From the IMG/VR virus record IMGVR_UViG_3300027985_000918, positions 124,001-188,000 of that record: 64,000 nt of DNA. One strand, given 5' to 3'. The notes under the pieces were generated by a model that saw only the letters and a program-made list of their open reading frames with translations, made no database searches and was not told the DNA's origin. Position 1 is the first letter of the stretch. Each line of letters begins with the position of its first letter. Positions 34,386 to 50,488 of the stretch are shown here, piece by piece. Made by a program: the position numbers and the translations under genes.

Positions 34386-34402
34386 TACTTGACGGAACGC
34401 AG

Positions 34403-34477
34403 TGCGCCCGGGGGGACTCGAACCCCCGCATCACCAAGTTTTAGAGACTCGGGCTCTAACCTCTGAGCTACGGGCGC
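34403..34477 (-). tRNA. tRNA with anticodon CUA (amber suppressor type); CCA not encoded
   Basis: Acceptor GCGCCCG/CGGGCGC, D stem GCTC/GAGC, anticodon stem CGAGT/ACTTG with loop CT-CTA-AA (anticodon 34444-34442), T stem GGGGG/CCCCC with TTCGAGT, discriminator A. Confidence 0.9.
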
Positions 34478-35089: not shown

Positions 35090-36253
35090 TCAATCCACCT
35101 TTCTCTTTGGGAGGCCAACGTGGAACGTGGCCCCTTCTCCGGGCATAGCCTCGCAGTCGATCCAGCCTTGGTGACGATCTAGAATCTTCTTCACCAGTGC
35201 CAGACCGATGCCCGTGCCCGGATAGTCAAACCGGGTGTGAAGCCTCTCGAAGAGCTGGAACACCTTGTCTTTGAATGCCATGTCGAACCCGATCCCGTTG
35301 TCCGACACTGAAATCACCCAGTCCTCGTCGGTCTCCTGGGCGGTGAACTGGATCAAGGGCACCCTGTCGGGGTGCCGGAACTTGATGCTGTTGCTGATCA
35401 GGTTCTGAAGCACGGTCCGCATCTGGTAGCGGTCTGCCCAGACGGTAGGTAGGTCCTGTGCCAAAACCCGGGCATTGGCCTGTTCGATGGGGATGGCCAG
35501 GTCTTCCAGAATGCTGCGGAGGATCTTGTTGAGGTCCACTGCCTCAAAGGGGTCTTCCAGCCTCCCCACCCGGCTGTAGGACAGGAGGTCATCCATCAAC
35601 GACTGCATGCGCTCCGTGGCGTTCAACATCACGTCGATATATGACTGCCCCTTGTCGTCCAGCACTTCGGCGTACTTCTCCTTGAGCCTTTGGCCGAAGG
35701 CCCTCACTTTGAGCAGGGGTTCTCGGAGGTCATGGCTGGCAGCGTAAGCGAACTGACGTAGCTCATCGTTGGACAGTTGAAGCTCTTCCGTCCGGGCCCT
35801 CACTAGAGCTTCCAAATCCTGGACATTCCCTCGATGCTCCGTCACATCCCGTACCAGGACTAGGCACTCGTCCTCATGACTGCGGGCGAACCGAGCCTCG
35901 AACACGGAATTAGGATGATTGGGGACCTTGAACTCCCAGGTGATTACCTCTCCAGTGTCCATCGCTTGGAGGGCTTTATGCAGGGTGGCGTTTGCGAATT
36001 CCGGCCTGCCTACATCGAGAACCCGCCGGCCGATAACGTTCTGGTGATCCGCCAAGGGGGAGGCATTCAGCCCCGGCGCCATGTCGGCATAGAACCCTTC
36101 TCGGGTGATGATGCAGATCAGGTCGGGAGAGGCAATGCGGAGGGCATCCAGACGACCGGGATCATTGACTCGGCCGTAAGAGGGATCCTGCTGGCACCGA
36201 TTCAGAAACGGACAGCTCTTGCCCTGCAGGCACCAGTCGGGAGAACTGGACAT
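35090..36253 (-). CDS. PAS-domain sensor histidine kinase (Cph1/BphP-type transmitter)
   Basis: FAYAASHDLREPL (H box), QNLISNSIKF (N), SDNGIGF (G1), FQLFERLH (F), GTGIGLA (G2). Confidence 0.92.
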   Translation of the reverse strand: MSSSPDWCLQGKSCPFLNRCQQDPSYGRVNDPGRLDALRIASPDLICIITREGFYADMAPGLNASPLADHQNVIGRRVLDVGRPEFANATLHKALQAMDTGEVITWEFKVPNHPNSVFEARFARSHEDECLVLVRDVTEHRGNVQDLEALVRARTEELQLSNDELRQFAYAASHDLREPLLKVRAFGQRLKEKYAEVLDDKGQSYIDVMLNATERMQSLMDDLLSYSRVGRLEDPFEAVDLNKILRSILEDLAIPIEQANARVLAQDLPTVWADRYQMRTVLQNLISNSIKFRHPDRVPLIQFTAQETDEDWVISVSDNGIGFDMAFKDKVFQLFERLHTRFDYPGTGIGLALVKKILDRHQGWIDCEAMPGEGATFHVGLPKRKVD

Positions 36254-36257
36254 GCCC

Positions 36258-37013
36258 TCACCCTACACTCTTGAGCGCCCGGATGGCTTCGACATCCACC
36301 ACCTGGACCAGGAGGGTTAGAAGAACCACGATGGTGATCAAACCCAGGAACAACATAACCGAAGCGACAGGGTGCAATGTGACCCATTCGGCCGTGTCCC
36401 GGACCCTATCCCAAGGGGTCTTCTTGATATTCTTGAGGATCTCTTCCTTTTGCTGGTCCAGCTTGACATCCAAGCGGCCGAACCCCTCTTTGAACTCGGA
36501 CCTCAGCTCACTTAGCTGAAAGGCAGTGCTGGTCTGAGCGGACGCACCCTCTCGGGTAAGGGATACTAGCTCCTGAACCTGGAGACCCACCCCTCCTGAT
36601 TCCGAGCCGTTTCGGATCTGCCTCTCATGTAGCCCGATGGCGTACAGGCAGGTCCGCTCCAGGAGGTCAGACGAGAAAGTCCCCTTCTCCAAGAATTCCG
36701 CCACCCCCGCCTCCAGAGCTTCATCCTGGAGACGGCGGTCCCCGTGGCTGGTGATAAGCACCACGGGGATGTGAAAATGCAGTCGCACCATCTCGGACAG
36801 CAGATCCATTCCGGACTGGTCGGGGAGACGATAGTCAAGGAGCATCACGTCGTAGCGGTGCTTCTTGACCTTCTCCAGGGCGGCGGCGGCGGTTTCGACG
36901 GCATCCACGCCAAACTTGGCCCGCTTGGAGTCATCGAGCAGGTCGATGACCAGCCGGGCGTCGTCCCGGTCGTCCTCAACCAACAGCACTCGAACAGTTG
37001 CGGGCGGGGGCAT
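36258..37013 (-). CDS. Receiver (REC) domain fused to coiled coil and C-terminal TM anchor
   Basis: LLVEDD, LLDYRLP, LITS, FLEKG; C-terminal VASVMLFLGLITIVVLLTLLVQV. Confidence 0.85.
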   Translation of the reverse strand: MPPPATVRVLLVEDDRDDARLVIDLLDDSKRAKFGVDAVETAAAALEKVKKHRYDVMLLDYRLPDQSGMDLLSEMVRLHFHIPVVLITSHGDRRLQDEALEAGVAEFLEKGTFSSDLLERTCLYAIGLHERQIRNGSESGGVGLQVQELVSLTREGASAQTSTAFQLSELRSEFKEGFGRLDVKLDQQKEEILKNIKKTPWDRVRDTAEWVTLHPVASVMLFLGLITIVVLLTLLVQVVDVEAIRALKSVG

Positions 37014-37160
37014 GTCTCGAACCTCCAAAAACAGCAGGACCCTCCTAAGTTGGGGCCGCTACCACGTATGGATTATCGAGCATCTACCATTCTCGGGGCC
37101 GACTTCACGATAGTGGTCCCTAGTCCCCCATCTTCTGGCCAGTGTTGTGATCCCTCACAG

Positions 37161-38079: not shown

Positions 38080-38109
38080 GGGATGCAGGACGAGCGAAGG
38101 AGAAACACA

Positions 38110-38532
38110 TTGAAGACCGACAACAAGATCCACACCACCTTGGCCGGGAACTTTGGAGCCAACTGCTCCGCCATCATGAGTGAGCAGGCCCCCTGCACCT
38201 TCGGGTTTGGGACCCTGTACAACTCGGACACCGAGTTCGGCAAACGGTACCTGGGCGTGGTGGTGGAATGCAAGATCCTCCCCAAGGACGAGCGGCGGCG
38301 CCCGGAGGACCTGCCGGAGAACTACACCCTCGCCGGGGTCACGGAGAAGTCGTGGGACATCTGGGACAACGTGTGGCTCAAGGTCCAAACCCACGCCGCC
38401 AACGGCGTGACCTCCCAGACCAAGTGGGTCTGGTGTGGGAACCGGCATGGCGGGGTCCAGGAGTACGCCAAGGTCGTTGCCCCGGTCCTGGCCGCCCTGG
38501 CCGTCCAGGAGTCCCGGGAGTCCGCTGAGTGA
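38110..38532 (+). CDS. Hypothetical protein
   Basis: TTG start after AAGGAG; promoter motif at 38053-38079. Confidence 0.6.
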   Translation: MKTDNKIHTTLAGNFGANCSAIMSEQAPCTFGFGTLYNSDTEFGKRYLGVVVECKILPKDERRRPEDLPENYTLAGVTEKSWDIWDNVWLKVQTHAANGVTSQTKWVWCGNRHGGVQEYAKVVAPVLAALAVQESRESAE

Positions 38533-38720
38533 CTCTTCCCCCGACCACTTGGGTCATGTCCCTCCGGCCTCGCCGGGGGGACACATACGAGGTTGCCCTG
38601 AAAGACTCTGGGCTGCAAGCCAATGTCCTTGCCTACCTCCAGACAGAGTTGGCTTCCCAGCCCGCCCTAGCCCTCTTTACAGCCGACCTGGCGGTCGAAG
38701 GACCCGATGCCGATGTGTGA
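38529..38720 (+). CDS. Small hypothetical protein
   Basis: GTGA coupling. Confidence 0.4.
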   Translation: MTLPPTTWVMSLRPRRGDTYEVALKDSGLQANVLAYLQTELASQPALALFTADLAVEGPDADV

Positions 38721-39522
38721 CGAAAGCGACAAGAACGCCACCCCCGACGAGATCACCGTGGATGAGGGCTCGACTAGCCTGGACGACGTGTACATCTCCA
38801 CGGCACGACTCGTGGAGGACCTGTTCGTCGAGAACGACCGGATGACCCAGCTTCTGCACATCTACGAAGAAGCACGAGACAGCAGGTACGGCTGGTTCGA
38901 GACCGTGTACGAGATGATGGAGGCTCTGGGTTACCGCCGGGAGGCCCAGGACAACACGTACAACAACCCCAACGATCTCGATGACGACTTCGTGTACGAG
39001 GTCTGGGTGTCCCCCGACTGGAAAGGCGATTGGATCTACCGCACCGAGATGAACGATGACGGCTACATCCCGGAACCTGATCACCGCCCCGAGTGGGCTA
39101 AGCCCATCCTGGACGAGATGGACGAAGACGGAAACGAGACCCTGCCTCAACTGGTGGTGGTCTGCCACTACCACATCGGGGGGGACTCCAGGTACGAGGG
39201 CAACTACAACAGCCCGGTGCTGGGCTACTTCGAGGGCGACTACACGGTGCCCTTCGACCTGTGCCTCCAGTGGCATCTGGAGCCCTGCGAAGAAGACGAC
39301 GACGAAGCCGCCCAGTTCTTCGCCCAAAATGCCAACGAGGGGGGCTACCTGGACAGTAGTGAGGCCACCTACCATCTGGAGTCCAAGTACGGCATCGAGG
39401 TCGTCGTGGACGAAGACGGGAACTCAGTCCCGTTCAACCCGGAAAAGCGGGCATTCCTGGTCCAGAACGAGAACGGGCAGCGGTTCTGGGCGTACCCCGA
39501 CCGACACTATTTCGGGCAATGA
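38707..39522 (+). CDS. Highly acidic hypothetical protein
   Basis: 271 aa, D/E-rich, strong GC3 codon bias. Confidence 0.7.
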   Translation: MPMCDESDKNATPDEITVDEGSTSLDDVYISTARLVEDLFVENDRMTQLLHIYEEARDSRYGWFETVYEMMEALGYRREAQDNTYNNPNDLDDDFVYEVWVSPDWKGDWIYRTEMNDDGYIPEPDHRPEWAKPILDEMDEDGNETLPQLVVVCHYHIGGDSRYEGNYNSPVLGYFEGDYTVPFDLCLQWHLEPCEEDDDEAAQFFAQNANEGGYLDSSEATYHLESKYGIEVVVDEDGNSVPFNPEKRAFLVQNENGQRFWAYPDRHYFGQ

Positions 39523-39524
39523 GG

Positions 39525-39550
39525 GGTAACCTGCCGTCCTCCCCGAGTAG
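39525..39550 (+). promoter_or_regulatory. Phage promoter motif heading the CYTH-MBL operon
   Basis: GGTAAC-N14-GAGTAG. Confidence 0.75.
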
Positions 39551-39574
39551 TTGATGAGAACAACGGAGGCCACC

Positions 39575-39823
39575 ATGAACACGGAAACCACCCGTGGTGG
39601 CCTCCACCAGCCTGGCGTAGGAGTTCGATTACTTATGGCTTCCAAGTGGCCCCTTCAGATCAAAGTCGGCAAGACCCGGTTCAAGATCATGCACCCGGAA
39701 CAGGGTCGGCACCAGATCATCAACACCAAGACAGGTGAGGTGGTGGGACATCTGGTAGAGCACCAGGTGCCGTTCAACGGACTCAAGGTCGCAGCCCGGG
39801 AAGTCATCGAGCAGGTCGCATGA
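39575..39823 (+). CDS. Hypothetical protein
   Basis: Promoter motif plus conserved leader. Confidence 0.65.
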   Translation: MNTETTRGGLHQPGVGVRLLMASKWPLQIKVGKTRFKIMHPEQGRHQIINTKTGEVVGHLVEHQVPFNGLKVAAREVIEQVA

Positions 39824-40287
39824 TGGGCATCGAGATCGAACGCAAATATCTCGTTGCCGACGACGGCTGGAAGCAGGAGCACGTCATCTCCCACCAGTCC
39901 ATTCGCCAGGGGTTCCTGTCCACGGACCCACTGCGGGTGGTCCGGGTGAGAGTTACCGAAGACCAGGGGTTCTTGACCGTCAAAGGGGCGGGCCATCTGT
40001 CCCGCCCCGAATACGAGTACGAGATCCCCACTGAGGATGCTGAAGCTCTCCTTCTGCTCTGCAAAGGGAAGATCATCCAGAAGACCCGCTGGACGCTGGT
40101 TTTCTCCGGCCGACACTGGGAGGTGGACGTATTCGAGGGCCAGCACGCAGGACTGGTCCTGGCTGAGACCGAAATGAAGGTCGAGAACGAGATCTTCAAG
40201 GTCCCTTCCTGGGCGGATCTGGATGTTACGATGTACCCCAGATACAAGAACATGAACCTCGCCTTGGAAGGGGAAGACATCCCATGA
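39820..40287 (+). CDS. CYTH / triphosphate tunnel metalloenzyme
   Basis: EIERKYLV, IRQGFL, VRVRV, LTVKG, EYEYEIP, KTR, WEVDVF, LAETE. Confidence 0.9.
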   Translation: MMGIEIERKYLVADDGWKQEHVISHQSIRQGFLSTDPLRVVRVRVTEDQGFLTVKGAGHLSRPEYEYEIPTEDAEALLLLCKGKIIQKTRWTLVFSGRHWEVDVFEGQHAGLVLAETEMKVENEIFKVPSWADLDVTMYPRYKNMNLALEGEDIP

Positions 40288-41096
40288 GCTTGACCATCAT
40301 CTCTCTCGGTCATGGAGGGGGCGTTCCTGTCTTCCCCTACGGGACCGCCGGCAACACCAACTTCGCTCTGGTCCCTGGGCGGCACGAAGGACCCGTGGTG
40401 GGCATCCTCCGGTCCAACCCCTACTGGCTCATCGACTGCGGGCCGGAAACCTTGATGAGGATCGCAGGGACGGGACAGATCCCGGAACCCATGGTTCAGA
40501 ACCTCCAGGGGGTCATTGTCACTCACTGCCATGGGGATCATTCTGGGGGGCTCTACGGTCTGGCTTGGAGGACTCACTTCATCGAAGAGAGGAAGGTCAA
40601 CCTGGTCTACCGGGAAGAGCTGATCCCGTTTTTGGAGGATCAGCTCATCGAGATCCAGTACCTGTCCGGAGACACCCCTCGGGTGCCCTGGACCTACTAC
40701 TGGGAGACCGTCGCCTGTTCTCCCACCCGGATATGGATGGACCTAGGGGATTTCAAGATCTGCTTTTTCAAGGTGGACCACAACATCCCCGGTTTTCCCA
40801 GCTTCGGAGTCGAGGTGCAGACCGTAGAGGGGGGCAGAGCTGTCTTCAGTGGAGACAGCGCCCACCCCATCGACGCCCACCGCTTCAGTGGTGCCGACGT
40901 GGTGTTCCACGATGTGCAGTTCTACACGAGCGACCCGAGGGTAGCCGTACACTGCCCATACGAGGCCCTGGAAACCGCTGTGAGCCCCGAGTTGCGGAAA
41001 AAGGTACACCTGGCCCATACCGGCCAGAAGCCGCCGGGGGCGGCCTTAGAGGCGTTCTCCTGGGCTTCTCTTGATACGATCGTAGTGGTGGATTAG
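40284..41096 (+). CDS. MBL-fold metallohydrolase resembling Apyc1 cyclic-nucleotide phosphodiesterases
   Basis: LIDCG, THCHGDHSGG, VDH, FSGDS, VFHDVQF, VHCPYEAL, VHLAHTG. Confidence 0.8.
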   Translation: MSLTIISLGHGGGVPVFPYGTAGNTNFALVPGRHEGPVVGILRSNPYWLIDCGPETLMRIAGTGQIPEPMVQNLQGVIVTHCHGDHSGGLYGLAWRTHFIEERKVNLVYREELIPFLEDQLIEIQYLSGDTPRVPWTYYWETVACSPTRIWMDLGDFKICFFKVDHNIPGFPSFGVEVQTVEGGRAVFSGDSAHPIDAHRFSGADVVFHDVQFYTSDPRVAVHCPYEALETAVSPELRKKVHLAHTGQKPPGAALEAFSWASLDTIVVVD

Positions 41097-42682
41097 CGGG
41101 AGGAACCCGAACGGCTATTGCTGTCGGTGGTGAGGCGCCGGCTCAGAAGGTACGTGTCGGTGTCGTGCTTGTCCGACAGGTCCTCCAAGAAGTTGATCAT
41201 TCCGACCGTGAGCACATCGAGGCGTTCACCAAGGTCCAGCACCTGCTTGATGTTCCCCTTGAAATCCTGCTCAGCAGCCAACGCCTGATCGAAATTGTCC
41301 CCAGGAATCTCATCCCACTGCTTGATCCAAAACGCCGTCCACATGGCCTGCTGCTTGGGATCCACAGCATCGACACCGTACATGTCCACCAGCTTCTCAG
41401 CCAGGCCGTCGATCTGATCGTCCATCGCCTCATACAGGCGCTGGAACAGGAGATGATCCCCGTAGTAGCCCGTCCCCGAAGCGGTCCAGTGGCAGTTGAG
41501 AATGAAGTCACGAAGGGCTCGGAGCTGACTCAGGAGGCGCATCAAAGCCAACTGGGCTGAGGCTTTGCCAGCGGCATCGGCCTTTTTTCCCGCTGCTGGG
41601 GGAACTACCTGAGTGATTCGACCGTCATTTGTCCCTACCCACAAAGGGACTTGGTGCAGAGCGGGAATGCTGGAATGCAGGTTCCTCCGTCCGACAAGCC
41701 CCTTGAAAGCCCGCAGGCCAAACCGGGTGGCCTGCCCTGAAGAAATGTCAGCGTAGATGAACCACGCCTTGTGTGGCTGGACGTAACGGAACTTGTGCTG
41801 GGCCAACTCAATGACTTTGTTGTCTTTCATCATGGAGGGGGCCAGCTCCCGAATCTGGGACATCCCGAACTTGCGCTCGAACTCCGCTAGCGCTTTCATC
41901 TCTGGGGTCTCTTCGGGCTCTGGTCCCACATCGTCGAACAAAGTGAACCCATCCAGCATGGCCCTCTTCCCTACCGGCTCGACCACCCAGTCGTCCACAT
42001 CATCGAACCTATCGAGCTGGGGGCGAACCATCGTTGCCGCCTTGTTGTCGGCGTCCTTGTCGTCCCGAGCCGTGAATTCCTTGGACCATAGCTCCTCCCC
42101 TGAGTCACTGAACAGGTAGACTCGGTACTTCCCGCCCGCCGCCGCCTGCTTGGACACCCATTTTGAAGCCAGGGAGTAGACGTAGCTCTCCACCTCATCG
42201 GTGGAAACCCCTGCCTTGTCCGCCAAGCCGTGAACCTTCGAGTCAGGCACGGCTTTCCCCCCATACTCCCTCAGGAGGGCGTGGAGCTGATCCTTCAGAT
42301 CCTTAGGGATGGCGGCCTTCTTGTCGCACTTGCCGGCCTCCATCCTCTCCAGCTTATCGTAGTAGGCCGGATCTTCGGTGAGGTGGTCCCGAGCAATCTC
42401 CCGAGCAAGGGATGGATCATCCGTGTGCTCCATCTCGACCTTCTGCCCCTTGGCAACAGCTTTGGGATCGAAGTCGGAGGGCTTCTTTTTGTCAGAGAGT
42501 CCGCCAGGAATCTGGTCCTTAGCCGTTTTGAACTCGTGGGAAGGTTTCATCTTCTTGTAGATCCCCATCACATAGGCGTAGAAATCCTTGTCGGACTCTT
42601 TGCGGCCGTCATCCTTGGCAATTTCCACCGCTTTGGTCCACTTCTCTTCATCACGCCTCGTGTGGACCACGTTGCTGGGCAT
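41093..42682 (-). CDS. Multidomain phage protein: ChaB-like N-terminus, DUF5661-like module, C-terminal ferritin/Dps-like four-helix bundle
   Basis: GQKVEMEHTDD..LAREIARDHLTEDPAYYDKL; HWTASG...HLLFQRLYEAMDDQIDGLAEK. Confidence 0.6.
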   Translation of the reverse strand: MPSNVVHTRRDEEKWTKAVEIAKDDGRKESDKDFYAYVMGIYKKMKPSHEFKTAKDQIPGGLSDKKKPSDFDPKAVAKGQKVEMEHTDDPSLAREIARDHLTEDPAYYDKLERMEAGKCDKKAAIPKDLKDQLHALLREYGGKAVPDSKVHGLADKAGVSTDEVESYVYSLASKWVSKQAAAGGKYRVYLFSDSGEELWSKEFTARDDKDADNKAATMVRPQLDRFDDVDDWVVEPVGKRAMLDGFTLFDDVGPEPEETPEMKALAEFERKFGMSQIRELAPSMMKDNKVIELAQHKFRYVQPHKAWFIYADISSGQATRFGLRAFKGLVGRRNLHSSIPALHQVPLWVGTNDGRITQVVPPAAGKKADAAGKASAQLALMRLLSQLRALRDFILNCHWTASGTGYYGDHLLFQRLYEAMDDQIDGLAEKLVDMYGVDAVDPKQQAMWTAFWIKQWDEIPGDNFDQALAAEQDFKGNIKQVLDLGERLDVLTVGMINFLEDLSDKHDTDTYLLSRRLTTDSNSRSGSSR

Positions 42683-43956
42683 TAGCGGATCTCCTTGTAT
42701 GTGAGGGTCGACAGGGCCTCTCCGGACCCCGTCACCAATCGGGCACACACCCACAACTCATCGGGCGTACCGTCATAGGCCGAAACCACAGGCACAGATT
42801 CGATTAGAGTACCCGAAACAGCATTGCCACGGGACTGAGCTCCCCCCCCAAGCACCCCGGAGCTGAGAACTAGAGAGCGGGCCCCATTGGGCAATCCGCT
42901 CCCGTTTACCCCCACCGCAATCTGGCTGCGGCTGTACTGGGCAATGGAATCCGCCCCTGGGACATCTGCCCAGACGGCAGCTCCTGTCCCACCGGGATTT
43001 AGCACCAAGCACCACAACAGGGCTTCGGTGTCCAGGTTGATGAAGCTATGCTCCAGAGCCCGGAGAGTGGCGTGGATGTTGGCGGCTTGAAGCCGGATAC
43101 CTAGAATGGTGGTGAGAGTGGTACTGGTCGCAGCCAACCCCGTTCCAGAGTCGGGCTGAGACCAAACCGATCGTTGGGCGCCAGGCTCATCCACGGCACC
43201 TTCCCGGTTTACTGCCGAACAGATCTGCATCAACTCTGTGGGGCCCGCAGTGGCCCCGGTGTTCTCGATTTCGTAGCGGACGGGGAGCTTCGGGGAACGG
43301 ATGTAGGGGAGAGTGTTCCCCCCCTGGTTGGCATGCTTGAACTCATGGACGTAGATGATCATCCCGTCGATGTCGAAGCCCATACGGACTCGCCCAACCC
43401 CCAACCATTGGAAATCGCACACCCAAATCTGGGTCTTGGTTAGATCCAGGGTGATACCGCTAGGCCCGGTTCCGTCAAGGGGATCCATGTTCCAGGAAGA
43501 CTGAGGGATGCGTTCGTAGGTGGTGGCCCCGGAGGCAACGGACCGGATGACCATTTCAGGGTCATCGTTATCCCTCACCTCCAAATACATCCCTTCGGCC
43601 CCATTGAAGTAGCCAACCTTCTGAGTCATATTGGCCTGGGGAGGCGCCATCAAAAAAGTGGCTAGGACAAGCTGACCCTGGGCTGCACGGTAAGAATAGA
43701 ATTCTTTGGACTGTCGGACTACACGGTCTCCGGCTGCCGCCGTCACTGCCAACCGCATGGTTCCCGAGCTAGGATGATATGTAGCCGTTCCGGCCCCCGC
43801 CACAGTGCCGTCCCAATACAGAGTACGATCTGCCGTGTCAAACAACGTCGAGAACTGGAGATGAGGATAGCTAACCCTCACCCGACTGAACGGGTCCAGG
43901 TTGGGGCCGTCAGAAATACCCACGTCCTCGGGGAAAGTGCTACCGGGATAACTCAT
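42682..43956 (-). CDS. Probable virion structural protein (beta-rich, lectin/LamG-like)
   Basis: Ala/Gly/Thr-rich and beta-strand-rich; late-type cluster; inference only. Confidence 0.5.
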   Translation of the reverse strand: MSYPGSTFPEDVGISDGPNLDPFSRVRVSYPHLQFSTLFDTADRTLYWDGTVAGAGTATYHPSSGTMRLAVTAAAGDRVVRQSKEFYSYRAAQGQLVLATFLMAPPQANMTQKVGYFNGAEGMYLEVRDNDDPEMVIRSVASGATTYERIPQSSWNMDPLDGTGPSGITLDLTKTQIWVCDFQWLGVGRVRMGFDIDGMIIYVHEFKHANQGGNTLPYIRSPKLPVRYEIENTGATAGPTELMQICSAVNREGAVDEPGAQRSVWSQPDSGTGLAATSTTLTTILGIRLQAANIHATLRALEHSFINLDTEALLWCLVLNPGGTGAAVWADVPGADSIAQYSRSQIAVGVNGSGLPNGARSLVLSSGVLGGGAQSRGNAVSGTLIESVPVVSAYDGTPDELWVCARLVTGSGEALSTLTYKEIR

Positions 43957-44721: not shown

Positions 44722-45627
44722 TTATGCGCCGAACAACTCTCCGATGAGGTCTTCTTCGCCCACTCCCGTCCACTTGGACGGGAACTTGGAGATCAGGGCT
44801 TCCCCCAGGTTCTTGAGGTAGTCGTAGCCGTAATCCCCATTCTCGGCACATCGGGAGAGGGTGTCGGGGATGTCATTCTCGATCTCCGAGCAGAAGAACA
44901 CGGCGGGGGCGGCAATAGCCGCAGAAGTGTCCACGTCCCCTGTGAGAGACACGATGTGCTTGAGAATAGCCGAGGCACTGTCGTAGCGTTGGATCGCCCC
45001 AATGGCCGCACGAACGTGCTGAAAGCCTTTCTCCTGAATGGGAGTAACCCAGCCATCTGCCCAACCCCATCCTGGAATCAGCTCTTCGATGTACGCTCCC
45101 GCATCCGCCTTGGGGCCGATGTGGTGGTATGTGTAGTGGGTGAGCAAAGCCGAGGCGGCAGCGGCCTCCAGCCCCGCCCTGGTGGCGTGCGTGAGACACC
45201 CCTGGAGGTAAGCGGCGTCAATGACTCCCTGCTCTTCCTTGAGCAATCCCAGGACCGGAGCCCGCATAGCGGCCCCCGACTTGTCACTGTAGGGACGGAT
45301 GCCCTTCAGAAACTCGGCCGGAGTTTGGACTCTCGCCAGAAAGTCGTAGAACGCCCCGGCGTATCCCTTGCGGGGGTCCCGTCGGAATGTGCTCAAAAAA
45401 GACTGGGCGATGTCACCCAAGCTCCAGGTGGACGGGAGTGGCTGCCGAAGCATCAACTCGGCCAACGCTACCTGCATCTGGGTGTCGTCCGAATATGTCC
45501 CGGGCTTCGTCTTCCACTTGGGGTGGCTCTGGAAGGTCCGAAGGTTGTTCCTCTTGGCGACGAATTTGGGGTCGGCATACTCGAAGCCGAAACCGTATCC
45601 GTCAAAAATCGCCGTATAGTGGAGCAC
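44722..45627 (-). CDS. ADP-ribosylglycohydrolase (ARH/DraG family)
   Basis: AIFDGYGFGFEY, YSDDTQM, SGAAMR, LTH, GDVDT. Confidence 0.88.
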   Translation of the reverse strand: MLHYTAIFDGYGFGFEYADPKFVAKRNNLRTFQSHPKWKTKPGTYSDDTQMQVALAELMLRQPLPSTWSLGDIAQSFLSTFRRDPRKGYAGAFYDFLARVQTPAEFLKGIRPYSDKSGAAMRAPVLGLLKEEQGVIDAAYLQGCLTHATRAGLEAAAASALLTHYTYHHIGPKADAGAYIEELIPGWGWADGWVTPIQEKGFQHVRAAIGAIQRYDSASAILKHIVSLTGDVDTSAAIAAPAVFFCSEIENDIPDTLSRCAENGDYGYDYLKNLGEALISKFPSKWTGVGEEDLIGELFGA

Positions 45628-45686: not shown

Positions 45687-46851
45687 GGCTGAGGTCTCTA
45701 CGGCGGGGATCCGGCGGAGGGGCGCTCGGCCCACCCGGCACCATCGAGAGGGATGCGTGAACCGTCCCCAGGTTCTCGTCAGTGTACCGGGTGCCGGCCT
45801 GACGGGCGGAGAGAGCCTGGGTGAACGTGTCGTACTGACTGGTCACCTTGGCGACCGCCCCCAACATCACATCTACTACCCGACGCTGGTCGTGCAGCGG
45901 GAGGACATGATCCGATCCCAGAACCCGATTCCAGTACCCGTCGATATCGTAAGAACAGGATTTGACATAATAGTTGTGGTCTGCAGTGTGGGCCAGAACG
46001 GTGAACACTTCCCCCTTGCGCCGGAGGCAGGAGAACGTGTCCTTAGCCGTGTCCAGCTCCTCGTCTTTGCTGATCCCGACCCCCTGCAAACAGTAGCGGC
46101 TCGCCATGCTCTCGGCACCGGCCTCGTCGGTGATAAAGAACGTGAAGACGTGTTTGGCCGACCCAGTGTCCACGGCGTGCAGGAGCCAGTGGGCGACGAT
46201 CTCCGGGCTCTCTTCACCGTCCCCCCCACCCGAGGCCTCGGTGTTCAGGGCCTCCAAATGGTCGTCGAGAAGGGGTCCGCTGGCGAAGTCGATAACCTCG
46301 ATCACGTCACCGTACTTCACATCGCCGTATGTGATGAACAGGATCTGAAGGTCATCCCCCAGGAACTTCTGGGCCTCCCCGAACATCAACGGGAGGCGAC
46401 GGAAGATCTCGGGAACCCAGGACCGGATAGACCCAGTCACATCCACGACGACCTGGATGACGGCCTTAGCCGTGCTCTTAAGCGTCTTGCCGTGGGGCCT
46501 CCGGTTGAAGGAGTGCGGCGGCACCGGGACGTGGTTATGCTGCCAAACCACAGAAGCGGCAGGCTTAGGGGCGGGCTTCGGCGGCGCCTGAACGGCAGGG
46601 CTAGGGTTCCACGCCCTGGACGCCTGGTCCTTGACAGCCTTATCCTTGGCAGCCTTGTCTTTGCACCCCCAGCACAGATCACCGCTGTAGTTCACCTCCT
46701 TGCCACAGGAGCAGCGGTAAGTAGGGGCTGGGGTGCTATAACCTCTCCGGGCTCGGCTGTAATCAGTTCTGCTGTAGATATCCTCGCTGGAGTCACTCCG
46801 ATCACGATAGTCACGTCGGTCACTGCCGCCCCATCCAAAGGATCCACTCAT
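45682..46851 (-). CDS. vWA-domain protein with RS-rich/zinc-finger N-terminus
   Basis: VVDVTGSI MIDAS, TYGD, SGGGDGEESPE, FITDE; CSC...CWGC. Confidence 0.75.
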   Translation of the reverse strand: MSGSFGWGGSDRRDYRDRSDSSEDIYSRTDYSRARRGYSTPAPTYRCSCGKEVNYSGDLCWGCKDKAAKDKAVKDQASRAWNPSPAVQAPPKPAPKPAASVVWQHNHVPVPPHSFNRRPHGKTLKSTAKAVIQVVVDVTGSIRSWVPEIFRRLPLMFGEAQKFLGDDLQILFITYGDVKYGDVIEVIDFASGPLLDDHLEALNTEASGGGDGEESPEIVAHWLLHAVDTGSAKHVFTFFITDEAGAESMASRYCLQGVGISKDEELDTAKDTFSCLRRKGEVFTVLAHTADHNYYVKSCSYDIDGYWNRVLGSDHVLPLHDQRRVVDVMLGAVAKVTSQYDTFTQALSARQAGTRYTDENLGTVHASLSMVPGGPSAPPPDPRRRDLSR

Positions 46852-47642
46852 CGGTCCCTCCACTGCTCCTCGCAGCTCTCTCGCCCCCACACATCCATAC
46901 GGATGTGGTACAGCTCTCGCCGTACATCATCCGCCGAGGGGGGTCTCTTAGCCGGGTCTCGTGCAATCATCTGCTCCAACAGATCAGCCAGGGGCTCGAC
47001 CATGTCGGAAGGCACGGTTCCCTTGTGAATGTCTCCCCCGGCCAGGGCAATACCTACCTTGCCGACGGAGTAGATGTCCGACTCAGGAAGAGGTGGGAAC
47101 CCCTGCTGGAACTCAGGAGCCATGTAGCCAGGGGTTCCCCCTTTGGCCTTCGTCTTCTCATTGGGTTCTAGCGTTGCCATACCCAGGTCTACCAGGGTGA
47201 CCTGGTGATCCTCGATGTCGAGGATGGCGTTGGCCGGCTTGATGTCGCAGTGGACGATTCCGTGCCGGCGGTGCAGATAGTCCAGAGCACCCAAGACCCG
47301 ATCCAACACCCAGCAGATGTGCTCGTCCGCCACAGGACCCCGGGTTTCCAGGTGCTTGTCTAGGGGGGTCCCCGGAATGTAGCTCAGGACCATGATCTGG
47401 CCGATGTCTCCACCCACCTCGAAGTAGTCCAACAGGCTGGGGAACTGGAAGTGGCGGAGCTTCGCCAACAGCTCCGCCTCCTGGCGGAACATCCTGGTGA
47501 ACGGATCCTTGTGGGTCTTCTCCTGTTTGATGACCACAGGAAGACCCCTGCCGAGGATACAATGCCGCCCTAGATACACGTCTCCGAAAGCACCCCCTCC
47601 GAGCTTTTTACGAATCTCCCAGCTTCCGATGACGTGTCCCAT
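46848..47642 (-). CDS. Hanks-type Ser/Thr protein kinase
   Basis: LGGGAFGDVY, VIK, EAELL, HCDIKPAN, DLG, GTPGYMAPE, SDIYSVG, RPP. Confidence 0.93.
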   Translation of the reverse strand: MGHVIGSWEIRKKLGGGAFGDVYLGRHCILGRGLPVVIKQEKTHKDPFTRMFRQEAELLAKLRHFQFPSLLDYFEVGGDIGQIMVLSYIPGTPLDKHLETRGPVADEHICWVLDRVLGALDYLHRRHGIVHCDIKPANAILDIEDHQVTLVDLGMATLEPNEKTKAKGGTPGYMAPEFQQGFPPLPESDIYSVGKVGIALAGGDIHKGTVPSDMVEPLADLLEQMIARDPAKRPPSADDVRRELYHIRMDVWGRESCEEQWRDR

Positions 47643-47739
47643 CTCAACAACACTCCCCGAACAGCTTGCCCCGCACCCTGTCGTACCCGGAATGAACCCG
47701 TTCCCATCCTCCAGACGGCGGATGGCGTGGTGACTCAGC

Positions 47740-48210
47740 TCATGGAAAGGGGGACTTGTGGGATGTCCGGAAGTGGCGAGACCACAGCTCCCGGACAACT
47801 TCTGGGGGAGCATCCGTGGCGAGGCCCTGAGGCGAACAGCCCCTCCCACCCCCGTACCCGTACACATGGTACTTGCCCCAACGACCGAGGAACACACTTG
47901 CGTCCCACCAGAAATCCCAGAGGGGAGTCCCCTCAGAGTTCAGCTCCCCCGTGTCATAGTAGCAGAGTTCCACTCCACTCTTCCCCAACTCCCGAAACGG
48001 CTCAGGGGTGTCACCCCAGGAATCGGGATCGATATACACAGCCCCCTCATCCTGCATGAGCTGCCAATCTCCGGGCCAGCAGTCGTTGCCGGAGGCGGAC
48101 TTGGCGACTGCAGGGGCCATCCTGGTGAGCTGCCCCAGCAACTCACCCACCCGGGCTTCGGCCCTCTGACGGGTGGTGCGGGGTTCAGTTCCGAAAGTGA
48201 ACGTCTTCAT
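47740..48210 (-). CDS. Hypothetical protein
   Basis: ATGA-coupled to upstream gene. Confidence 0.6.
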   Translation of the reverse strand: MKTFTFGTEPRTTRQRAEARVGELLGQLTRMAPAVAKSASGNDCWPGDWQLMQDEGAVYIDPDSWGDTPEPFRELGKSGVELCYYDTGELNSEGTPLWDFWWDASVFLGRWGKYHVYGYGGGRGCSPQGLATDAPPEVVRELWSRHFRTSHKSPFP

Positions 48211-49442
48211 ACGTCGTCGCCGGTCGCTTTGCCGTAGTAGGCGGGCAAACTGGGCATAGCCTCGTAGAGGCATGACCGTAGGTAGGGGTACCCGAGATCG
48301 TCCCAAATGCGGAAATACGGGATAACATTCCCGAACTTCTCCCTTTCGTTGAGGATCTGGATACGTCTGATCTTCTCATCCTCTGGTAGGTGTTGCTCGT
48401 CGAAGCGAGCCTGGGTGTTGGGGTCCACACCTCTTTTTGCCAAGAGTTTGCTTTGGTCTGAGTTTCGCACTACGATCACGTTGCCGTTGACCAAAGAGGC
48501 CATGTCATTCTCGACCAGGAGAGCCCACTCCAGGATGATGACCCCCGCCTTGTCCGCCAACCACTCCCGCATTTTCCGGAGGACGTGAGGCTTGGTCCTC
48601 GTGTGGATCTGCTTGAGCATGTCCGGGGTGATCTCCCCGCTAGAGATCTTGGCCTTGAGCACAGCCGTGTTGACATTGTCTCCAAGGGGCATCAACACAT
48701 CCTTGCCCACGAGGTCAGCGATATCGTCCCGGACCTTCTGAGCGCCTGGCGTGTCCTCCTCGTATAGGTCACGGATGCACTTATCGAGGTTCAGGTGGTG
48801 GGCGGGGATGCCGTCGAGCCTGAGCCTCTTCTCCAGCTCCTTCGCCACCCAGGTCTTGCCTGTCGCCACCCGACCGCAGATACCAACCATGAATTGGCGA
48901 TGCAGTTTGACCTCCAAGCGATGCTTCACTCGGAGTGGCACTAGATGACCGATATCGACGTGCCGCTGGGCCATAGCCTTGACCAAACTGGAGCTGACGT
49001 GAGCCCAGTCAGGATCCGGGTGGACGAACACCACCATGTCCTTGATGCCGGGCATGATCCGGTCGTGGTGGCCCATCTGAGACTCCTCGTAAGCACGGTC
49101 ACGAGCGTCCCTCACCCCCCGAAAAATCACGTCGATCCCCTCCCGGAGGACGACGTCCACCAGAAGGTCGTTGGACCCGATGACCCGCCATCTCCCCCGA
49201 CAATCACCCGGAAGGAAAGTCGAGAGAGCATGGGTGACATGAAGCATCCTCTCGTTCATCTCTAGGAGGTACTTGCCCGCCTTATCGTCGTTGTTTCCGA
49301 CCCAGACCACCAGCTCGTCGATGACGGGTGCCCCCGGATCGTACTTCCCGAGGCACTTCCGAATGATGTGCAGGTGCCCCCGGGTCACGGGGTCTCCCGA
49401 CAAAGCGAACAATCCACGCACGGAGAACCTCCTTTCGTCCAT
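48207..49442 (-). CDS. Bifunctional phosphopantetheine adenylyltransferase / dephospho-CoA kinase (CoaD-CoaE fusion)
   Basis: SGDPVTRGH, IFRGVR..D..YE, HVSSSLVK (CoaD); VGICGRVATGKT, LDKCIR, EWALLVE (CoaE). Confidence 0.8.
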   Translation of the reverse strand: MDERRFSVRGLFALSGDPVTRGHLHIIRKCLGKYDPGAPVIDELVVWVGNNDDKAGKYLLEMNERMLHVTHALSTFLPGDCRGRWRVIGSNDLLVDVVLREGIDVIFRGVRDARDRAYEESQMGHHDRIMPGIKDMVVFVHPDPDWAHVSSSLVKAMAQRHVDIGHLVPLRVKHRLEVKLHRQFMVGICGRVATGKTWVAKELEKRLRLDGIPAHHLNLDKCIRDLYEEDTPGAQKVRDDIADLVGKDVLMPLGDNVNTAVLKAKISSGEITPDMLKQIHTRTKPHVLRKMREWLADKAGVIILEWALLVENDMASLVNGNVIVVRNSDQSKLLAKRGVDPNTQARFDEQHLPEDEKIRRIQILNEREKFGNVIPYFRIWDDLGYPYLRSCLYEAMPSLPAYYGKATGDDV

Positions 49443-49447
49443 GACCC

Positions 49448-49473
49448 CTACCCGTTTTGGGTAGCTCGTTACC
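49448..49473 (-). promoter_or_regulatory. Phage promoter motif upstream of coaD-coaE
   Basis: GGTAAC-N14-GGGTAG. Confidence 0.75.
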
Positions 49474-49513
49474 CGTCCCTCGGGGGGTATGGTCCACCAC
49501 ACAGGAGGTCCCC

Positions 49514-50488
49514 ATGAGCAACCTGCGGCTGATTTCCGGAGGTCAGAACAAAGCCCCGGGGGGGTCCCCATCCCAAATCGCCAACATCAAAGGCATCGGG
49601 ATGGCCGACTACGTCTGGCCCGCCCAGGATGGGGGGATTTATTGGAGGAAGCGTCCCGTAGTCTTGATTAAGGGTGGCACTGTTCGGGACGCCTCCGATA
49701 CAGTCCCCATCATCGAGGTGTGGACTTTCGCCACGACGCTGCCAGGGGAATCCCCGGAGGTGAATGTCCTCAACCAGTACGCCCTGAACCCCTGCTACTA
49801 CCTTCCGGATCCGACCCGGCCCGAGGGATCTTTCCTCGTGTGCTGCGAGGTTAAGACCCTTGACGGAAACCCCACCGCCTCAAACTCCAGGGCCACATTG
49901 AGGGCCACCCATGAATCCGTGGGGGGACTGCAAGACTCTCTGGACCACCGAGGTTCGGCCTGGGGTTGGATTCAGGGGTATAGCCTGATCGATGCCAAAG
50001 GCAACGAGGTGACGTTCGAGATCAGCAACGAGGTGTTCGAGCACCACTTCGGAGCTTGCATCGACGCCGGCCTCATGATCATGGCGGGGGACCCGCTCTC
50101 TCTGGGGTTCTGGTCCTACACTCTGGGAGACCGGGGTTTCCCCGAGATCCTGGAGCCGGACCTCCCGAACCCCATCATCATGGGGGATCAGGTCATCCTC
50201 TCCCGGCATCTCCTGAGCAAAATCGCTCGGGACCGAGGACTCCGAGTCCTCTGGGACAGCACCATGCTGACCTACACGGATGAGTCCCTCGCTGAGTCTG
50301 AAGACCCCCTGGAGCTTCTGGATAGAGTCGAGGGAGCGTACCCATACCGAACCTGGAACCCCAACAGCCGGGAGTTCCAGATCTCCCACATCGCCGTCAG
50401 CGTTCCCCCGAACGCTGATCCCTATCACCAGGCCGCTAAGGTGTTGGCGGCTATCCACCATAAGGGCAACAATCGTGCCGCAGAATAG
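49514..50488 (+). CDS. Glutamine synthetase type II-like protein, catalytically degenerate
   Basis: ADYVW, LNP....DP.R...FLVCCEV....P..SNSR, VFEHHFGACIDAGL, GDQVILSRHLL; the EQEY motif appears as IQGY. Confidence 0.65.
   Translation: MSNLRLISGGQNKAPGGSPSQIANIKGIGMADYVWPAQDGGIYWRKRPVVLIKGGTVRDASDTVPIIEVWTFATTLPGESPEVNVLNQYALNPCYYLPDPTRPEGSFLVCCEVKTLDGNPTASNSRATLRATHESVGGLQDSLDHRGSAWGWIQGYSLIDAKGNEVTFEISNEVFEHHFGACIDAGLMIMAGDPLSLGFWSYTLGDRGFPEILEPDLPNPIIMGDQVILSRHLLSKIARDRGLRVLWDSTMLTYTDESLAESEDPLELLDRVEGAYPYRTWNPNSREFQISHIAVSVPPNADPYHQAAKVLAAIHHKGNNRAAE

What the first reader, a model, noticed from the sequence alone, without database searches (positions are those of the whole stretch)
39525..41096. 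CYTH gene translationally coupled to an Apyc1-like cyclic-nucleotide phosphodiesterase
Seen: the MBL protein has LIDCG, THxHxDHxGG, FHDxQF, VH..L and V.L.H.G, the pattern I recall for anti-Pycsar Apyc1 rather than RNase Z. It overlaps (ATGA) a CYTH enzyme under an early-type promoter and leader. Known: Apyc1 cleaves cCMP/cUMP, and CYTH enzymes are triphosphatases or nucleotide cyclases. Inference: a two-gene module for destroying or rewiring nucleotide second messengers; the pairing is unfamiliar to me.
Basis: partly seen in the sequence, partly recalled or inferred. Interest (0 to 1): 0.7.

Follow-up and report, generated by a model that had tools for sequence, protein, structure and literature searches.

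The report
Apyc1-like phosphodiesterase beside a stray CYTH gene
A 402-kb phage from a hydrothermal vent carries a divergent relative of the anti-Pycsar enzyme Apyc1 directly after a bacterial-type triphosphatase gene, but the two sit together only in this phage, so they look like independent accessory genes rather than a two-enzyme module.

Summary
The genes are real. A CYTH/TTM gene (39820-40287) overlaps by ATGA a metallo-beta-lactamase (MBL) gene (40284-41096). No promoter-like site or recurring motif lies upstream.

The MBL is not RNase Z. Its family profile, its AlphaFold model and its nearest neighbours among 1.84 billion proteins all point to Apyc1, and the phage has a separate true RNase Z inside its tRNA array. 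It is still not a canonical Apyc1. It scores 17 bits against Pfam's 50-bit cut-off. It sits in a small large-phage clade on a long branch. It lacks Glu74, which Apyc1 needs to hydrolyse cCMP. Cyclic-nucleotide hydrolysis is therefore likely but unproven.

The CYTH protein is a NeuTTM-type triphosphatase with every tunnel residue intact, closest to stand-alone CYTH proteins, those with names being bacterial.

The pairing is not conserved. None of ten other clade contexts has a CYTH, none of 79 other viral CYTH loci has this MBL, and the nearest relative has two small ORFs where the CYTH sits. ATGA overlaps are routine in this genome.

Verdict: a new variant of a known counter-defence enzyme plus an unrelated accessory gene. 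The module idea is unsupported.

The parts
38707..39522 (+). 271-aa acidic protein of unknown family, second ORF listed of the same-strand block (after 38083-38532) that ends with the MBL
   Evidence: ORF; no Pfam or PHROG hit; 50% identical to the 305-aa protein at the syntenic place of L002
39575..39823 (+). Conserved 82-aa protein of unknown function. GGAGG lies 5 nt before the ATG, there is an alternative TTG start at 39551, and its stop overlaps the CYTH start (ATGA, 39820-39823)
   Evidence: 44% identity, E 2e-19, to the 70-aa ORF at L002 4415-4627; no family hit
39820..40287 (+). CYTH / triphosphate tunnel metalloenzyme of the NeuTTM type, 155 aa (homologues begin at the second ATG, 39823)
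   Evidence: PF01928 E 1.6e-10 and phrog_6660 E 3e-23. PDB: only NeuTTM 2FBL/3TYP (E 3e-18 for the single sequence, 100 bits for the profile). E5, E7, K9, R42, R44, K55, E64, E66, K88, R90, E101, D103, E116 and E118 are all conserved
40284..41096 (+). Apyc1-like binuclear MBL-fold phosphodiesterase, 270 aa, of a divergent large-phage clade. Its ATG overlaps the CYTH stop (ATGA), an SD-like GGAAGGGGAAG lies 7 nt upstream, and its TAG stop abuts the convergent gene 41093-42754

Best explanation
These are two neighbouring but evolutionarily independent accessory genes at the end of a short plus-strand block of a 402-kb jumbo phage.

(1) The MBL belongs to a small, discrete clade found on large-phage and metagenomic contigs. 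Its nearest relatives are the anti-Pycsar Apyc1 cyclic-nucleotide phosphodiesterases. It keeps the full binuclear metal site: D51, H81, H83, D85, H86, H166, D191 and H223. It most likely hydrolyses a cyclic phosphodiester of a nucleotide second messenger and so blunts cNMP-type host immunity. This step is inferred. The substrate may have shifted, because the clade lost Apyc1's Glu74 and gained its own invariant residues (N24-T25-N26 and E123).

(2) The CYTH protein is a NeuTTM-type triphosphatase. Its closest relatives are stand-alone CYTH proteins, those with names being bacterial, so it was probably captured from a bacterium. It most likely cleaves inorganic triphosphate or another triphosphate. 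That too is inferred from homology.

The ATGA overlap reflects the dense gene packing that is normal in this genome, not a dedicated two-enzyme pathway.
For: MBL identity:
- The single sequence hits Apyc1 first in the PDB (7u2r 3e-7, 7t28 2e-6), ahead of RNase Z (1.7e-5).
- The clade profile without P0029 scores Apyc1 at 87, 74 and 71 bits over the full length, ELAC2/RNase Z at about 54 bits and YhfI at 33 bits.
- The AF2 model has pLDDT 93.
- Foldseek TM-scores (normalised to target length) are 0.80-0.84 for Apyc1, 0.71-0.76 for YhfI and 0.57-0.67 for RNase Z.
- VIA-align Z is 28.4, 27.7 and 26.0 for Apyc1, 23.5 for YhfI and about 21 for RNase Z.
- An exhaustive search gives 34 representatives at E<=1e-30, then a drop from 143 to 116 bits.
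- Of the next 40 hits, 37 are PF23023 at E<=1e-12.
- In the tree the clade is monophyletic (SH-aLRT 100) among phage Apyc1-like proteins, including SBSphiJ Apyc1.
- A separate RNase Z (PDB 7xgt, E 2e-46) sits between tRNA genes at genome position 47.5-48.3 kb.

CYTH identity. NeuTTM is a specific PPPase with no cyclase activity (PMC3440374).

Independence of the two genes:
- None of ten other MBL-clade contexts holds a CYTH.
- None of 79 other viral CYTH loci (+-4 kb) holds this MBL.
- There is no recurrent neighbour family among 71 distinct CYTH loci.
- Synteny with L002 shows the CYTH in the place of a 64-aa and a 49-aa ORF.
- ATGA junctions are common in this genome.
Against: - There is no biochemical evidence for either enzyme.
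- The MBL scores only 17 bits on PF23023 (cut-off 50), and clade members score 17-27 bits on the generic N-terminal motif region only.
- Glu74, required for cCMP hydrolysis in Apyc1 (PMC9117128), is Tyr91 here and varies across the clade.
- Apyc1 homologues with altered nucleotide-binding loops cleave cNMPs weakly or not at all (PMC11724313).
- The stem branch of the clade is long, 2.2 substitutions per site.
- A loose association of CYTH with phosphoesterases does recur. In L024 a metallophosphoesterase, a CYTH and an Apyc1 lie within 2.5 kb. In Bacillus phage Nachito a TTM overlaps a DHH phosphoesterase. In a 548-kb phage a CYTH and an Apyc1-like MBL lie 7.5 kb apart. Some functional link is therefore not excluded.
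Confidence: 0.6

Rival explanations
1. CYTH and MBL act together on one nucleotide-signalling pathway. For example, the CYTH removes or cleaves a triphosphate, or depletes an NTP-derived precursor or product, while the MBL opens the cyclic or linear phosphodiester. Translational coupling would ensure stoichiometric synthesis.
For: There is a 4-nt ATGA overlap. CYTH lies next to phosphoesterases of other folds in two Bacillus-type phages: L024 has a metallophosphoesterase then a CYTH, with an Apyc1 1 kb downstream, and Nachito has a TTM overlapping a DHH phosphoesterase. In a 548-kb phage a CYTH and an Apyc1-like MBL lie 7.5 kb apart on one strand.
Against: The adjacency is absent from all ten other contexts of the MBL clade and from 79 other viral CYTH loci. 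The closest relative (66% identical MBL, syntenic flanks) has two small ORFs instead of the CYTH, and its MBL is ATGA-coupled to one of them. CYTH neighbours in phages are heterogeneous: NAPRTase, capsid protein, TnpB, UvrD and hypothetical proteins. ATGA overlaps are routine here. The complex prediction gave no answer and counts neither way.
Confidence: 0.08
2. The MBL is an RNA-processing or RNA-repair phosphodiesterase, either an RNase Z/BN-like 3' tRNA trimmer or a 2',3'-cyclic phosphodiesterase. It would serve the phage's 30 tRNAs or repair tRNAs cut by host anticodon nucleases.
For: The phage encodes 30 tRNAs, among them a CUA-anticodon tRNA. RNase Z models give partial hits of 42 bits on residues 43-171. 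JGI names two clade members 'ribonuclease BN'. One clade member lies 1.2 kb downstream of an RNA ligase gene.
Against: RNase Z ranks clearly below Apyc1 by profile and by structure, and the TIGR02651 score is 42 against a cut-off of 293. A bona fide RNase Z is already encoded inside the tRNA array 116 kb away. The MBL is not near any tRNA array, and the RNA ligase neighbour appears in only one context.
Confidence: 0.12
3. The MBL clade is a counter-defence hydrolase whose substrate has moved away from 3',5'-cNMPs to another immune messenger, such as a cyclic di- or oligonucleotide, a 2',3'-cNMP or an ADP-ribose-derived cyclic signal.
For: The clade has a long stem branch and its own invariant residues (N24-T25-N26, E123). 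It has lost Apyc1 Glu74 and carries a variable insert at residues 29-46. Loop changes abolish cNMP cleavage in other homologues (PMC11724313). Neighbours in several contexts deal with ADP-ribose or nucleotides: an ADP-ribosylglycohydrolase, a Macro domain, NT5C and nucleoside deoxyribosyltransferases.
Against: Nothing points positively to a particular alternative substrate. The distance from GGL to the motif-3 His (76 residues) matches the active Apyc1 proteins (75-83). The fold superposes on Apyc1 at 2.2 A over about 235 residues.
Confidence: 0.17

Closest known systems
Apyc1 anti-Pycsar phosphodiesterase (Bacillus phage SBSphiJ/Bsp38, Paenibacillus; Pfam PF23023; PDB 7T28, 7U2R, 7U2S)
   Same: Both have an MBL fold of about 250-270 aa and the LIDCG...HxHxDHxGG motif plus the downstream His and Asp metal ligands. 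Both are encoded by phages. Apyc1 is the best profile and structural match, and Apyc1-family proteins are the nearest sequence neighbours of the clade.
   Different: Identity is only 17-27%. The score is far below the Pfam cut-off (17 against 50 bits). Glu74 of the GGLEE motif is replaced (Y91-G92). The clade has its own invariant N24-T25-N26 and E123 and a variable insert at 29-46. Clade members sit on large-phage and metagenomic contigs (up to 536 kb), not in Bacillus or Staphylococcus phages. No activity data exist.
RNase Z / ELAC tRNA 3' endonuclease (TIGR02651; PDB 1Y44, 2FK6)
   Same: Both belong to the same MBL subgroup and share the metal-binding motifs.
   Different: Profile and structure scores are lower (about 54 bits; Z about 21). 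The score of 42 falls far short of the 293-bit cut-off. The phage has a separate RNase Z in its tRNA array.
Bacillus subtilis YhfI / BA1088 MBL phosphodiesterases (PDB 6KNS, 1ZKP)
   Same: They are similar in size and fold and are class II cyclic-nucleotide phosphodiesterase-like.
   Different: They are more distant than Apyc1 (33 and 30 bits; Z 23.5 and 23.3). YhfI prefers cAMP and cGMP (PMC9117128).
NeuTTM (Nitrosomonas europaea NE1496; PDB 2FBL/3TYP), a specific inorganic triphosphatase of the CYTH/TTM superfamily
   Same: The window's CYTH protein has the same length, the EIERK (ExExK) motif and all acidic and basic tunnel residues, including Lys52 (K55 here). NeuTTM is the only significant PDB match.
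   Different: Tyr28 of the proposed Tyr28-Lys52 dyad (PMC3440374) is Phe32, as in 73 of 120 close homologues. The C-terminal PYxxW tail is missing. The gene is phage-encoded and its role in infection is unknown.

Membership tests
Apyc1 (Pfam PF23023; Hobbs et al. 2022) | MBL fold with HxHxDH and the further His and Asp ligands of a binuclear metal site | tested here: met
   D51, H81, H83, D85, H86, H166, D191 and H223 are invariant in the clade. The AF2 model has pLDDT 93 and an MBL fold.
Apyc1 (Pfam PF23023; Hobbs et al. 2022) | Score at or above the curated family cut-off (50 bits) | tested here: not met
   The window protein scores 17.0 bits, on residues 49-112 only. The clade members tested either score 20-27 bits or give no PF23023 hit at E<=0.001. 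Only the outlier P0029 passes, at 112 bits.
Apyc1 (Pfam PF23023; Hobbs et al. 2022) | Closer to characterised Apyc1 than to RNase Z, YhfI or other MBL phosphodiesterases | tested here: met
   Profile scores are 87, 74 and 71 bits for Apyc1, about 54 for RNase Z/ELAC2 and 33 for YhfI. Structural Z is 26-28 against 21-23.5. Of the nearest outgroup proteins, 37 of 40 are PF23023. See also the tree.
Apyc1 (Pfam PF23023; Hobbs et al. 2022) | Glu74 (first E of GGLEE), required for cCMP hydrolysis | tested here: not met
   The aligned position is Y91 and varies across the clade (Y, A, P, K, T and others). It is nearly invariant Glu in the Apyc1-like outgroup A6. The requirement comes from PMC9117128.
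Apyc1 (Pfam PF23023; Hobbs et al. 2022) | Nucleotide-binding loop and Tyr112 reaching into the pocket of the opposing protomer | tested here: inconclusive
   Y126 aligns with Tyr112 in one profile alignment and lies two residues away in another. The distance from GGL to the motif-3 His is 76 residues, against 75 in P. sp. J14 and 83 in Bsp38.
Apyc1 (Pfam PF23023; Hobbs et al. 2022) | Homodimer | not tested
   The single complex job scored only the CYTH partner and returned 'no answer'.
Apyc1 (Pfam PF23023; Hobbs et al. 2022) | Hydrolysis of cCMP and cUMP (broad cNMP specificity) and rescue of phage from Pycsar | not testable with these tools
   This needs enzyme assays and plaque assays.
RNase Z (TIGR02651) | Score at the equivalog cut-off, with a full-length match | tested here: not met
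   42.2 bits against 292.95, on residues 43-171 only.
RNase Z (TIGR02651) | It is the genome's tRNA 3'-processing enzyme | tested here: not met
   A different ORF (genome 47,506-48,342; PDB RNase ZS1 E 2e-46) lies between tRNA-Gly and tRNA-Ile in the tRNA array.
CYTH / TTM, NeuTTM subgroup (PF01928) | Pfam cut-off, ExExK motif and charged tunnel residues | tested here: met
   41.5 bits against 23.2. E5-I-E7-R-K9, R42, R44, K55, R62, E64, E66, K88, R90, E101, D103, E116 and E118 are conserved.
CYTH / TTM, NeuTTM subgroup (PF01928) | Tyr28-Lys52 catalytic dyad proposed for NeuTTM | tested here: inconclusive
   The Lys is present (K55). The Tyr is Phe32, and Phe occurs in 73 of 120 close homologues. 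The dyad proposal is from PMC3440374.
CYTH / TTM, NeuTTM subgroup (PF01928) | Specific PPPi hydrolysis, no cyclase activity | not testable with these tools
   This needs an enzyme assay.
Class IV adenylate cyclase (CyaB / YpAC-IV type CYTH) | Detectable closeness to characterised cyclases | tested here: not met
   No class IV cyclase chain appears at E<=1 with the single sequence or with the profile. Only NeuTTM and two marginal archaeal CYTH proteins appear.
Conserved two-gene module (CYTH + MBL) | The adjacency recurs in related and unrelated genomes | tested here: not met
   It occurs in 0 of 10 other clade contexts and 0 of 79 other viral CYTH loci. The only looser co-locations are L024 (1 kb) and G009 (7.5 kb), both with canonical-type Apyc1-like proteins.

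The most novel reading that the evidence does not exclude
The CYTH triphosphatase and the Apyc1-like MBL work together as a counter-defence pair, attacking one triphosphate-bearing or triphosphate-derived nucleotide immune signal from two ends. On this reading the loose co-location of CYTH genes with MBL, DHH or metallophosphoesterase genes in unrelated large phages reflects a previously unrecognised role for phage TTM enzymes in immune evasion.
Probability: 0.06. Interest if true: 0.75.

Novelty: new variant of a known kind. Interest (0 to 1): 0.35.

Why it matters
If the clade does cleave cyclic nucleotides, Apyc1-type immune evasion extends from Bacillus and Staphylococcus phages to environmental phages with large genomes. 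The clade is also a natural variant lacking Glu74, which could reveal how substrate choice is set in this enzyme family. If it cleaves something else, it marks a new messenger-degrading counter-defence.

NeuTTM-type CYTH genes turned up on at least 117 viral contigs and in 39 GenBank phage records, yet the library searches that paired CYTH, TTM or inorganic triphosphatase with phage terms returned no study of a phage-encoded one. That is a small open question in its own right.

The practical lesson is that start/stop overlap in a densely packed phage genome is not evidence of a functional pair.

Tried and rejected
- Promoter and leader. The sigma-70 scan found nothing in 38300-41500. Neither half of the 39523-39558 gap recurs in the window beyond near-chance 3-mismatch matches. 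Genome-wide 9-mer enrichment flagged only the start-codon context CCACCATGA.
- Near-identical phage records: none in GenBank phages.
- Physical CYTH-MBL complex. 
- Transcription evidence. Only DNA runs from hydrothermal-vent metagenomes hold the sequence, so no reads were laid.
- Locus search with the broad CYTH alignment A3 failed for lack of conserved stretches. The narrower A4 worked.
- The genome search with PF01928 missed the divergent CYTH of L024's record that my own HMM finds. Its '0 of 5' tally is therefore weak.
- A crude stop-codon recoding test (ORF length with TAG, TGA or TAA read as sense) was uninformative in this GC-rich genome.
- The first profile, A1, contained a true Apyc1 (P0029) that could inflate the Apyc1 scores. 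It was rebuilt without P0029 as A2.
- The idea that the CYTH is a class IV adenylate cyclase was considered and rejected.
Full report
WHAT IS THERE. The window is bases 124,001-188,000 of a 402,383-bp virus record with direct terminal repeats (IMG/VR UViG_3300028422_000919). Its GC content is 60% and the DNA is held by hydrothermal-vent metagenome runs.

The flagged region is the end of a short plus-strand block:
- 38083-38532, 149 aa
- 38707-39522, 271 aa
- 39575-39823, 82 aa
- CYTH, 39820-40287
- MBL, 40284-41096

The block runs tail-to-tail into a minus-strand block. That block begins with a 553-aa DUF5661 plus ferritin/Dps-like protein and virion proteins.

Both ATGA overlaps are in the sequence, at 39820-39823 and 40284-40287.

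The 'early-type promoter and leader' is not correct. The stretch is a protein-coding gene. It is preceded by GGAGG and conserved at 44% identity (E 2e-19) at the syntenic position of the nearest related contig. No sigma-70-like site or convincing recurring motif lies in the 52-nt gap upstream.

THE MBL. Pfam gives only the generic MBL families above their cut-offs. The Apyc1 model PF23023 gives 17 bits against a cut-off of 50, and only over the LIDCG-HxHxDH region. Even so, the single sequence already ranks Apyc1 structures first in the PDB.

A word-index search found 28 close homologues at 33-66% identity. All come from metagenomes, several on contigs of 119-241 kb. It also found one distant protein, P0029. 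P0029 is a true Apyc1 (112 bits), whereas the clade members tested give 20-27 bits or no PF23023 hit at all. I therefore rebuilt the profile without it.

The evidence then lines up as follows:
- The rebuilt profile scores the three solved Apyc1 proteins at 87, 74 and 71 bits over their full length. ELAC2 and RNase Z score about 54 bits, and YhfI scores 33.
- The AF2 model is confident, with pLDDT 93.3 and pTM 0.92.
- Foldseek and VIA-align both rank Apyc1 first. Z is 28.4, 27.7 and 26.0 at 2.2-2.6 A rmsd over 231-238 residues. Next come MBLBt2 (25.2), YhfI (23.5), PhnP and PqqB (about 22-23) and RNase Z (about 21).
- An exhaustive HMMER search of 1.84 billion representatives finds 34 proteins at E<=1e-30 (143-356 bits). 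The score then drops to 116 bits.
- Of the next 40 proteins, 37 are PF23023 at E<=1e-12, and they keep the Glu of GGLE.
- A maximum-likelihood tree makes the 32 clade rows one group (SH-aLRT 100) on a stem of 2.2 substitutions per site. The group sits among phage Apyc1-like proteins, including the experimentally validated SBSphiJ enzyme. The root is the phage's own RNase Z. Support for nesting inside Apyc1 is weak (82), and no YhfI or PhnP rows were available.
- The genome encodes 30 tRNAs. Inside one tRNA array lies a separate MBL protein whose best PDB match is RNase ZS1 (E 2e-46).

The protein is Apyc1-like.

WHY IT IS NOT SIMPLY AN APYC1. Hobbs et al. (PMC9117128) found that the metal ligands, Glu74 and Tyr112 are required for cCMP hydrolysis, and that an Apyc1-specific loop enters the pocket. 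Tesson et al. (PMC11724313) showed that homologues with a shortened or lengthened loop cleave cNMPs weakly or not at all.

In the window's clade:
- The metal ligands are invariant.
- The Glu74 position is Tyr91 and is variable.
- The Tyr112 position may be Y126.
- The clade has its own invariant E123 and N24-T25-N26, plus a variable insert at residues 29-46.
- The spacing from GGL to the motif-3 His is 76 residues, within the range of active Apyc1 proteins (75-83).

I therefore file it as a new variant. It is a sister or derived clade of Apyc1 whose cyclic-nucleotide phosphodiesterase activity is probable but unproven.

THE CYTH. It passes PF01928 and phrog_6660. Its only significant PDB relatives are NeuTTM 2FBL and 3TYP, at 100 bits with a profile. 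No class IV adenylate cyclase appears.

All tunnel residues and the ExExK motif are kept. Tyr28 of NeuTTM's proposed dyad is Phe, as in 73 of 120 close homologues. NeuTTM is a specific inorganic triphosphatase without cyclase activity (PMC3440374).

The closest homologues, at 48-56% identity, are stand-alone CYTH proteins of mostly 150-160 aa. Those that carry names are bacterial: Flavobacteriales, Verrucomicrobia, Polyangiales, Magnetococcales and Thiogranum. Viral-contig CYTH proteins are more distant, at 47% or less. This suggests capture from a bacterium.

IS IT A MODULE? From the MBL side, none of ten other clade contexts has a CYTH. These are the contexts of P0001, P0012, P0015, P0002, P0004, P0018 and P0026, plus loci L007-L009.

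In the closest one (L002, 66% identical MBL) the flanks are syntenic. The shared genes are the 271/305-aa protein, the small ORF, the ferritin-like protein, the ADP-ribosylglycohydrolase and the response regulator with its histidine kinase. Two ORFs of 64 and 49 aa occupy the CYTH slot, and the MBL is ATGA-coupled to the 49-aa ORF.

From the CYTH side, 80 viral loci were examined at +-4 kb. Only the window's own contig has the MBL. No neighbour family recurs in more than 4 of 71 distinct loci. The larger neighbours are NAPRTase, capsid protein, TnpB, UvrD, UDP-glucose dehydrogenase and proteins without a Pfam match. In cultured phages the CYTH sits among hypothetical genes.

ATGA junctions number at least 74 in this genome. 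The pair therefore looks like a chance juxtaposition in a variable accessory region.

The caveat is a loose, fold-independent association with phosphoesterases:
- In L024 a metallophosphoesterase, a CYTH and an Apyc1 lie within 2.5 kb.
- In Bacillus phage Nachito a TTM gene overlaps a DHH phosphoesterase gene.
- In a 548-kb phage a CYTH and an Apyc1-like MBL lie 7.5 kb apart.

This keeps a small probability for a functional link. It may equally reflect shared residence in accessory or counter-defence islands. No paper in the library mentions CYTH together with Apyc1.

VERDICT. The Apyc1-like reading of the MBL is supported as homology, with defined departures. The promoter/leader claim is refuted. 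The two-gene module is not supported. I rate it a new variant of a known kind, of moderate-to-low interest.

Noticed in passing
window 34402-34477 (-): ARAGORN calls this tRNA 'Pyl' because its anticodon is CUA, so it is a putative amber suppressor. It lies about 5 kb from the locus, and the genome has 29 further tRNAs in arrays. The MBL gene ends in TAG, but homologues end at the same place, so that TAG is a real stop. Whether the phage recodes TAG late in infection was not resolved.
   Followed up: partly
G000 genome 47,506-48,342 (+), outside the window (L116 2007-2843): A bona fide RNase Z-type MBL (PDB RNase ZS1, E 2e-46) lies between tRNA-Gly and tRNA-Ile inside a tRNA array. It is a phage-encoded tRNA 3'-processing enzyme.
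   Followed up: yes
window 35090-36253 (-) and 36258-37028 (-): The phage encodes a PAS-HisKA-HATPase sensor kinase and a response regulator, with a weak hit to the cyclic-phosphate-processing receiver domain cREC_REC. The pair is conserved in the related contig L002.
   Followed up: partly
window 44722-45627 (-): ADP-ribosylglycohydrolase (PF03747), 68% identical in L002. It is a candidate for reversing host ADP-ribosylation.
   Followed up: no
window 46848-47897 (-): Eukaryotic-type Ser/Thr protein kinase domain (PF00069, E 1e-33).
   Followed up: no
window 48207-49571 (-): A 454-aa fusion of a pantetheine-phosphate adenylyltransferase-like (CoaD) domain and a dephospho-CoA kinase-like (CoaE) domain. 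This would be a CoA-synthase-like auxiliary gene.
   Followed up: no
window 41093-42754 (-): A 553-aa protein with DUF5661 and a C-terminal ferritin/Dps-like domain. It converges on the MBL gene with overlapping stop codons. The ferritin-like part is conserved in L002.
   Followed up: no
L030 3992-5471 (Bacillus phage Nachito, OP380492); L024 3601-6645: In two Bacillus-type phages the CYTH gene abuts a phosphoesterase of another fold. In Nachito it is a DHH phosphoesterase, with overlapping genes. In L024 it is a calcineurin-like metallophosphoesterase, with an Apyc1 1 kb downstream.
   Followed up: partly
L080 4484-5683; L034 (Xanthomonas phage RTH11) 6054-6528: A nicotinate phosphoribosyltransferase gene follows the CYTH directly in the viral contig L080 and lies 2.5 kb downstream in RTH11. 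This may be a link to NAD salvage genes.
   Followed up: no
L003 2611-3789: An RNA ligase (PF09414) lies five genes upstream of a clade MBL (P0012). It is the only context that hints at an RNA-repair role.
   Followed up: no
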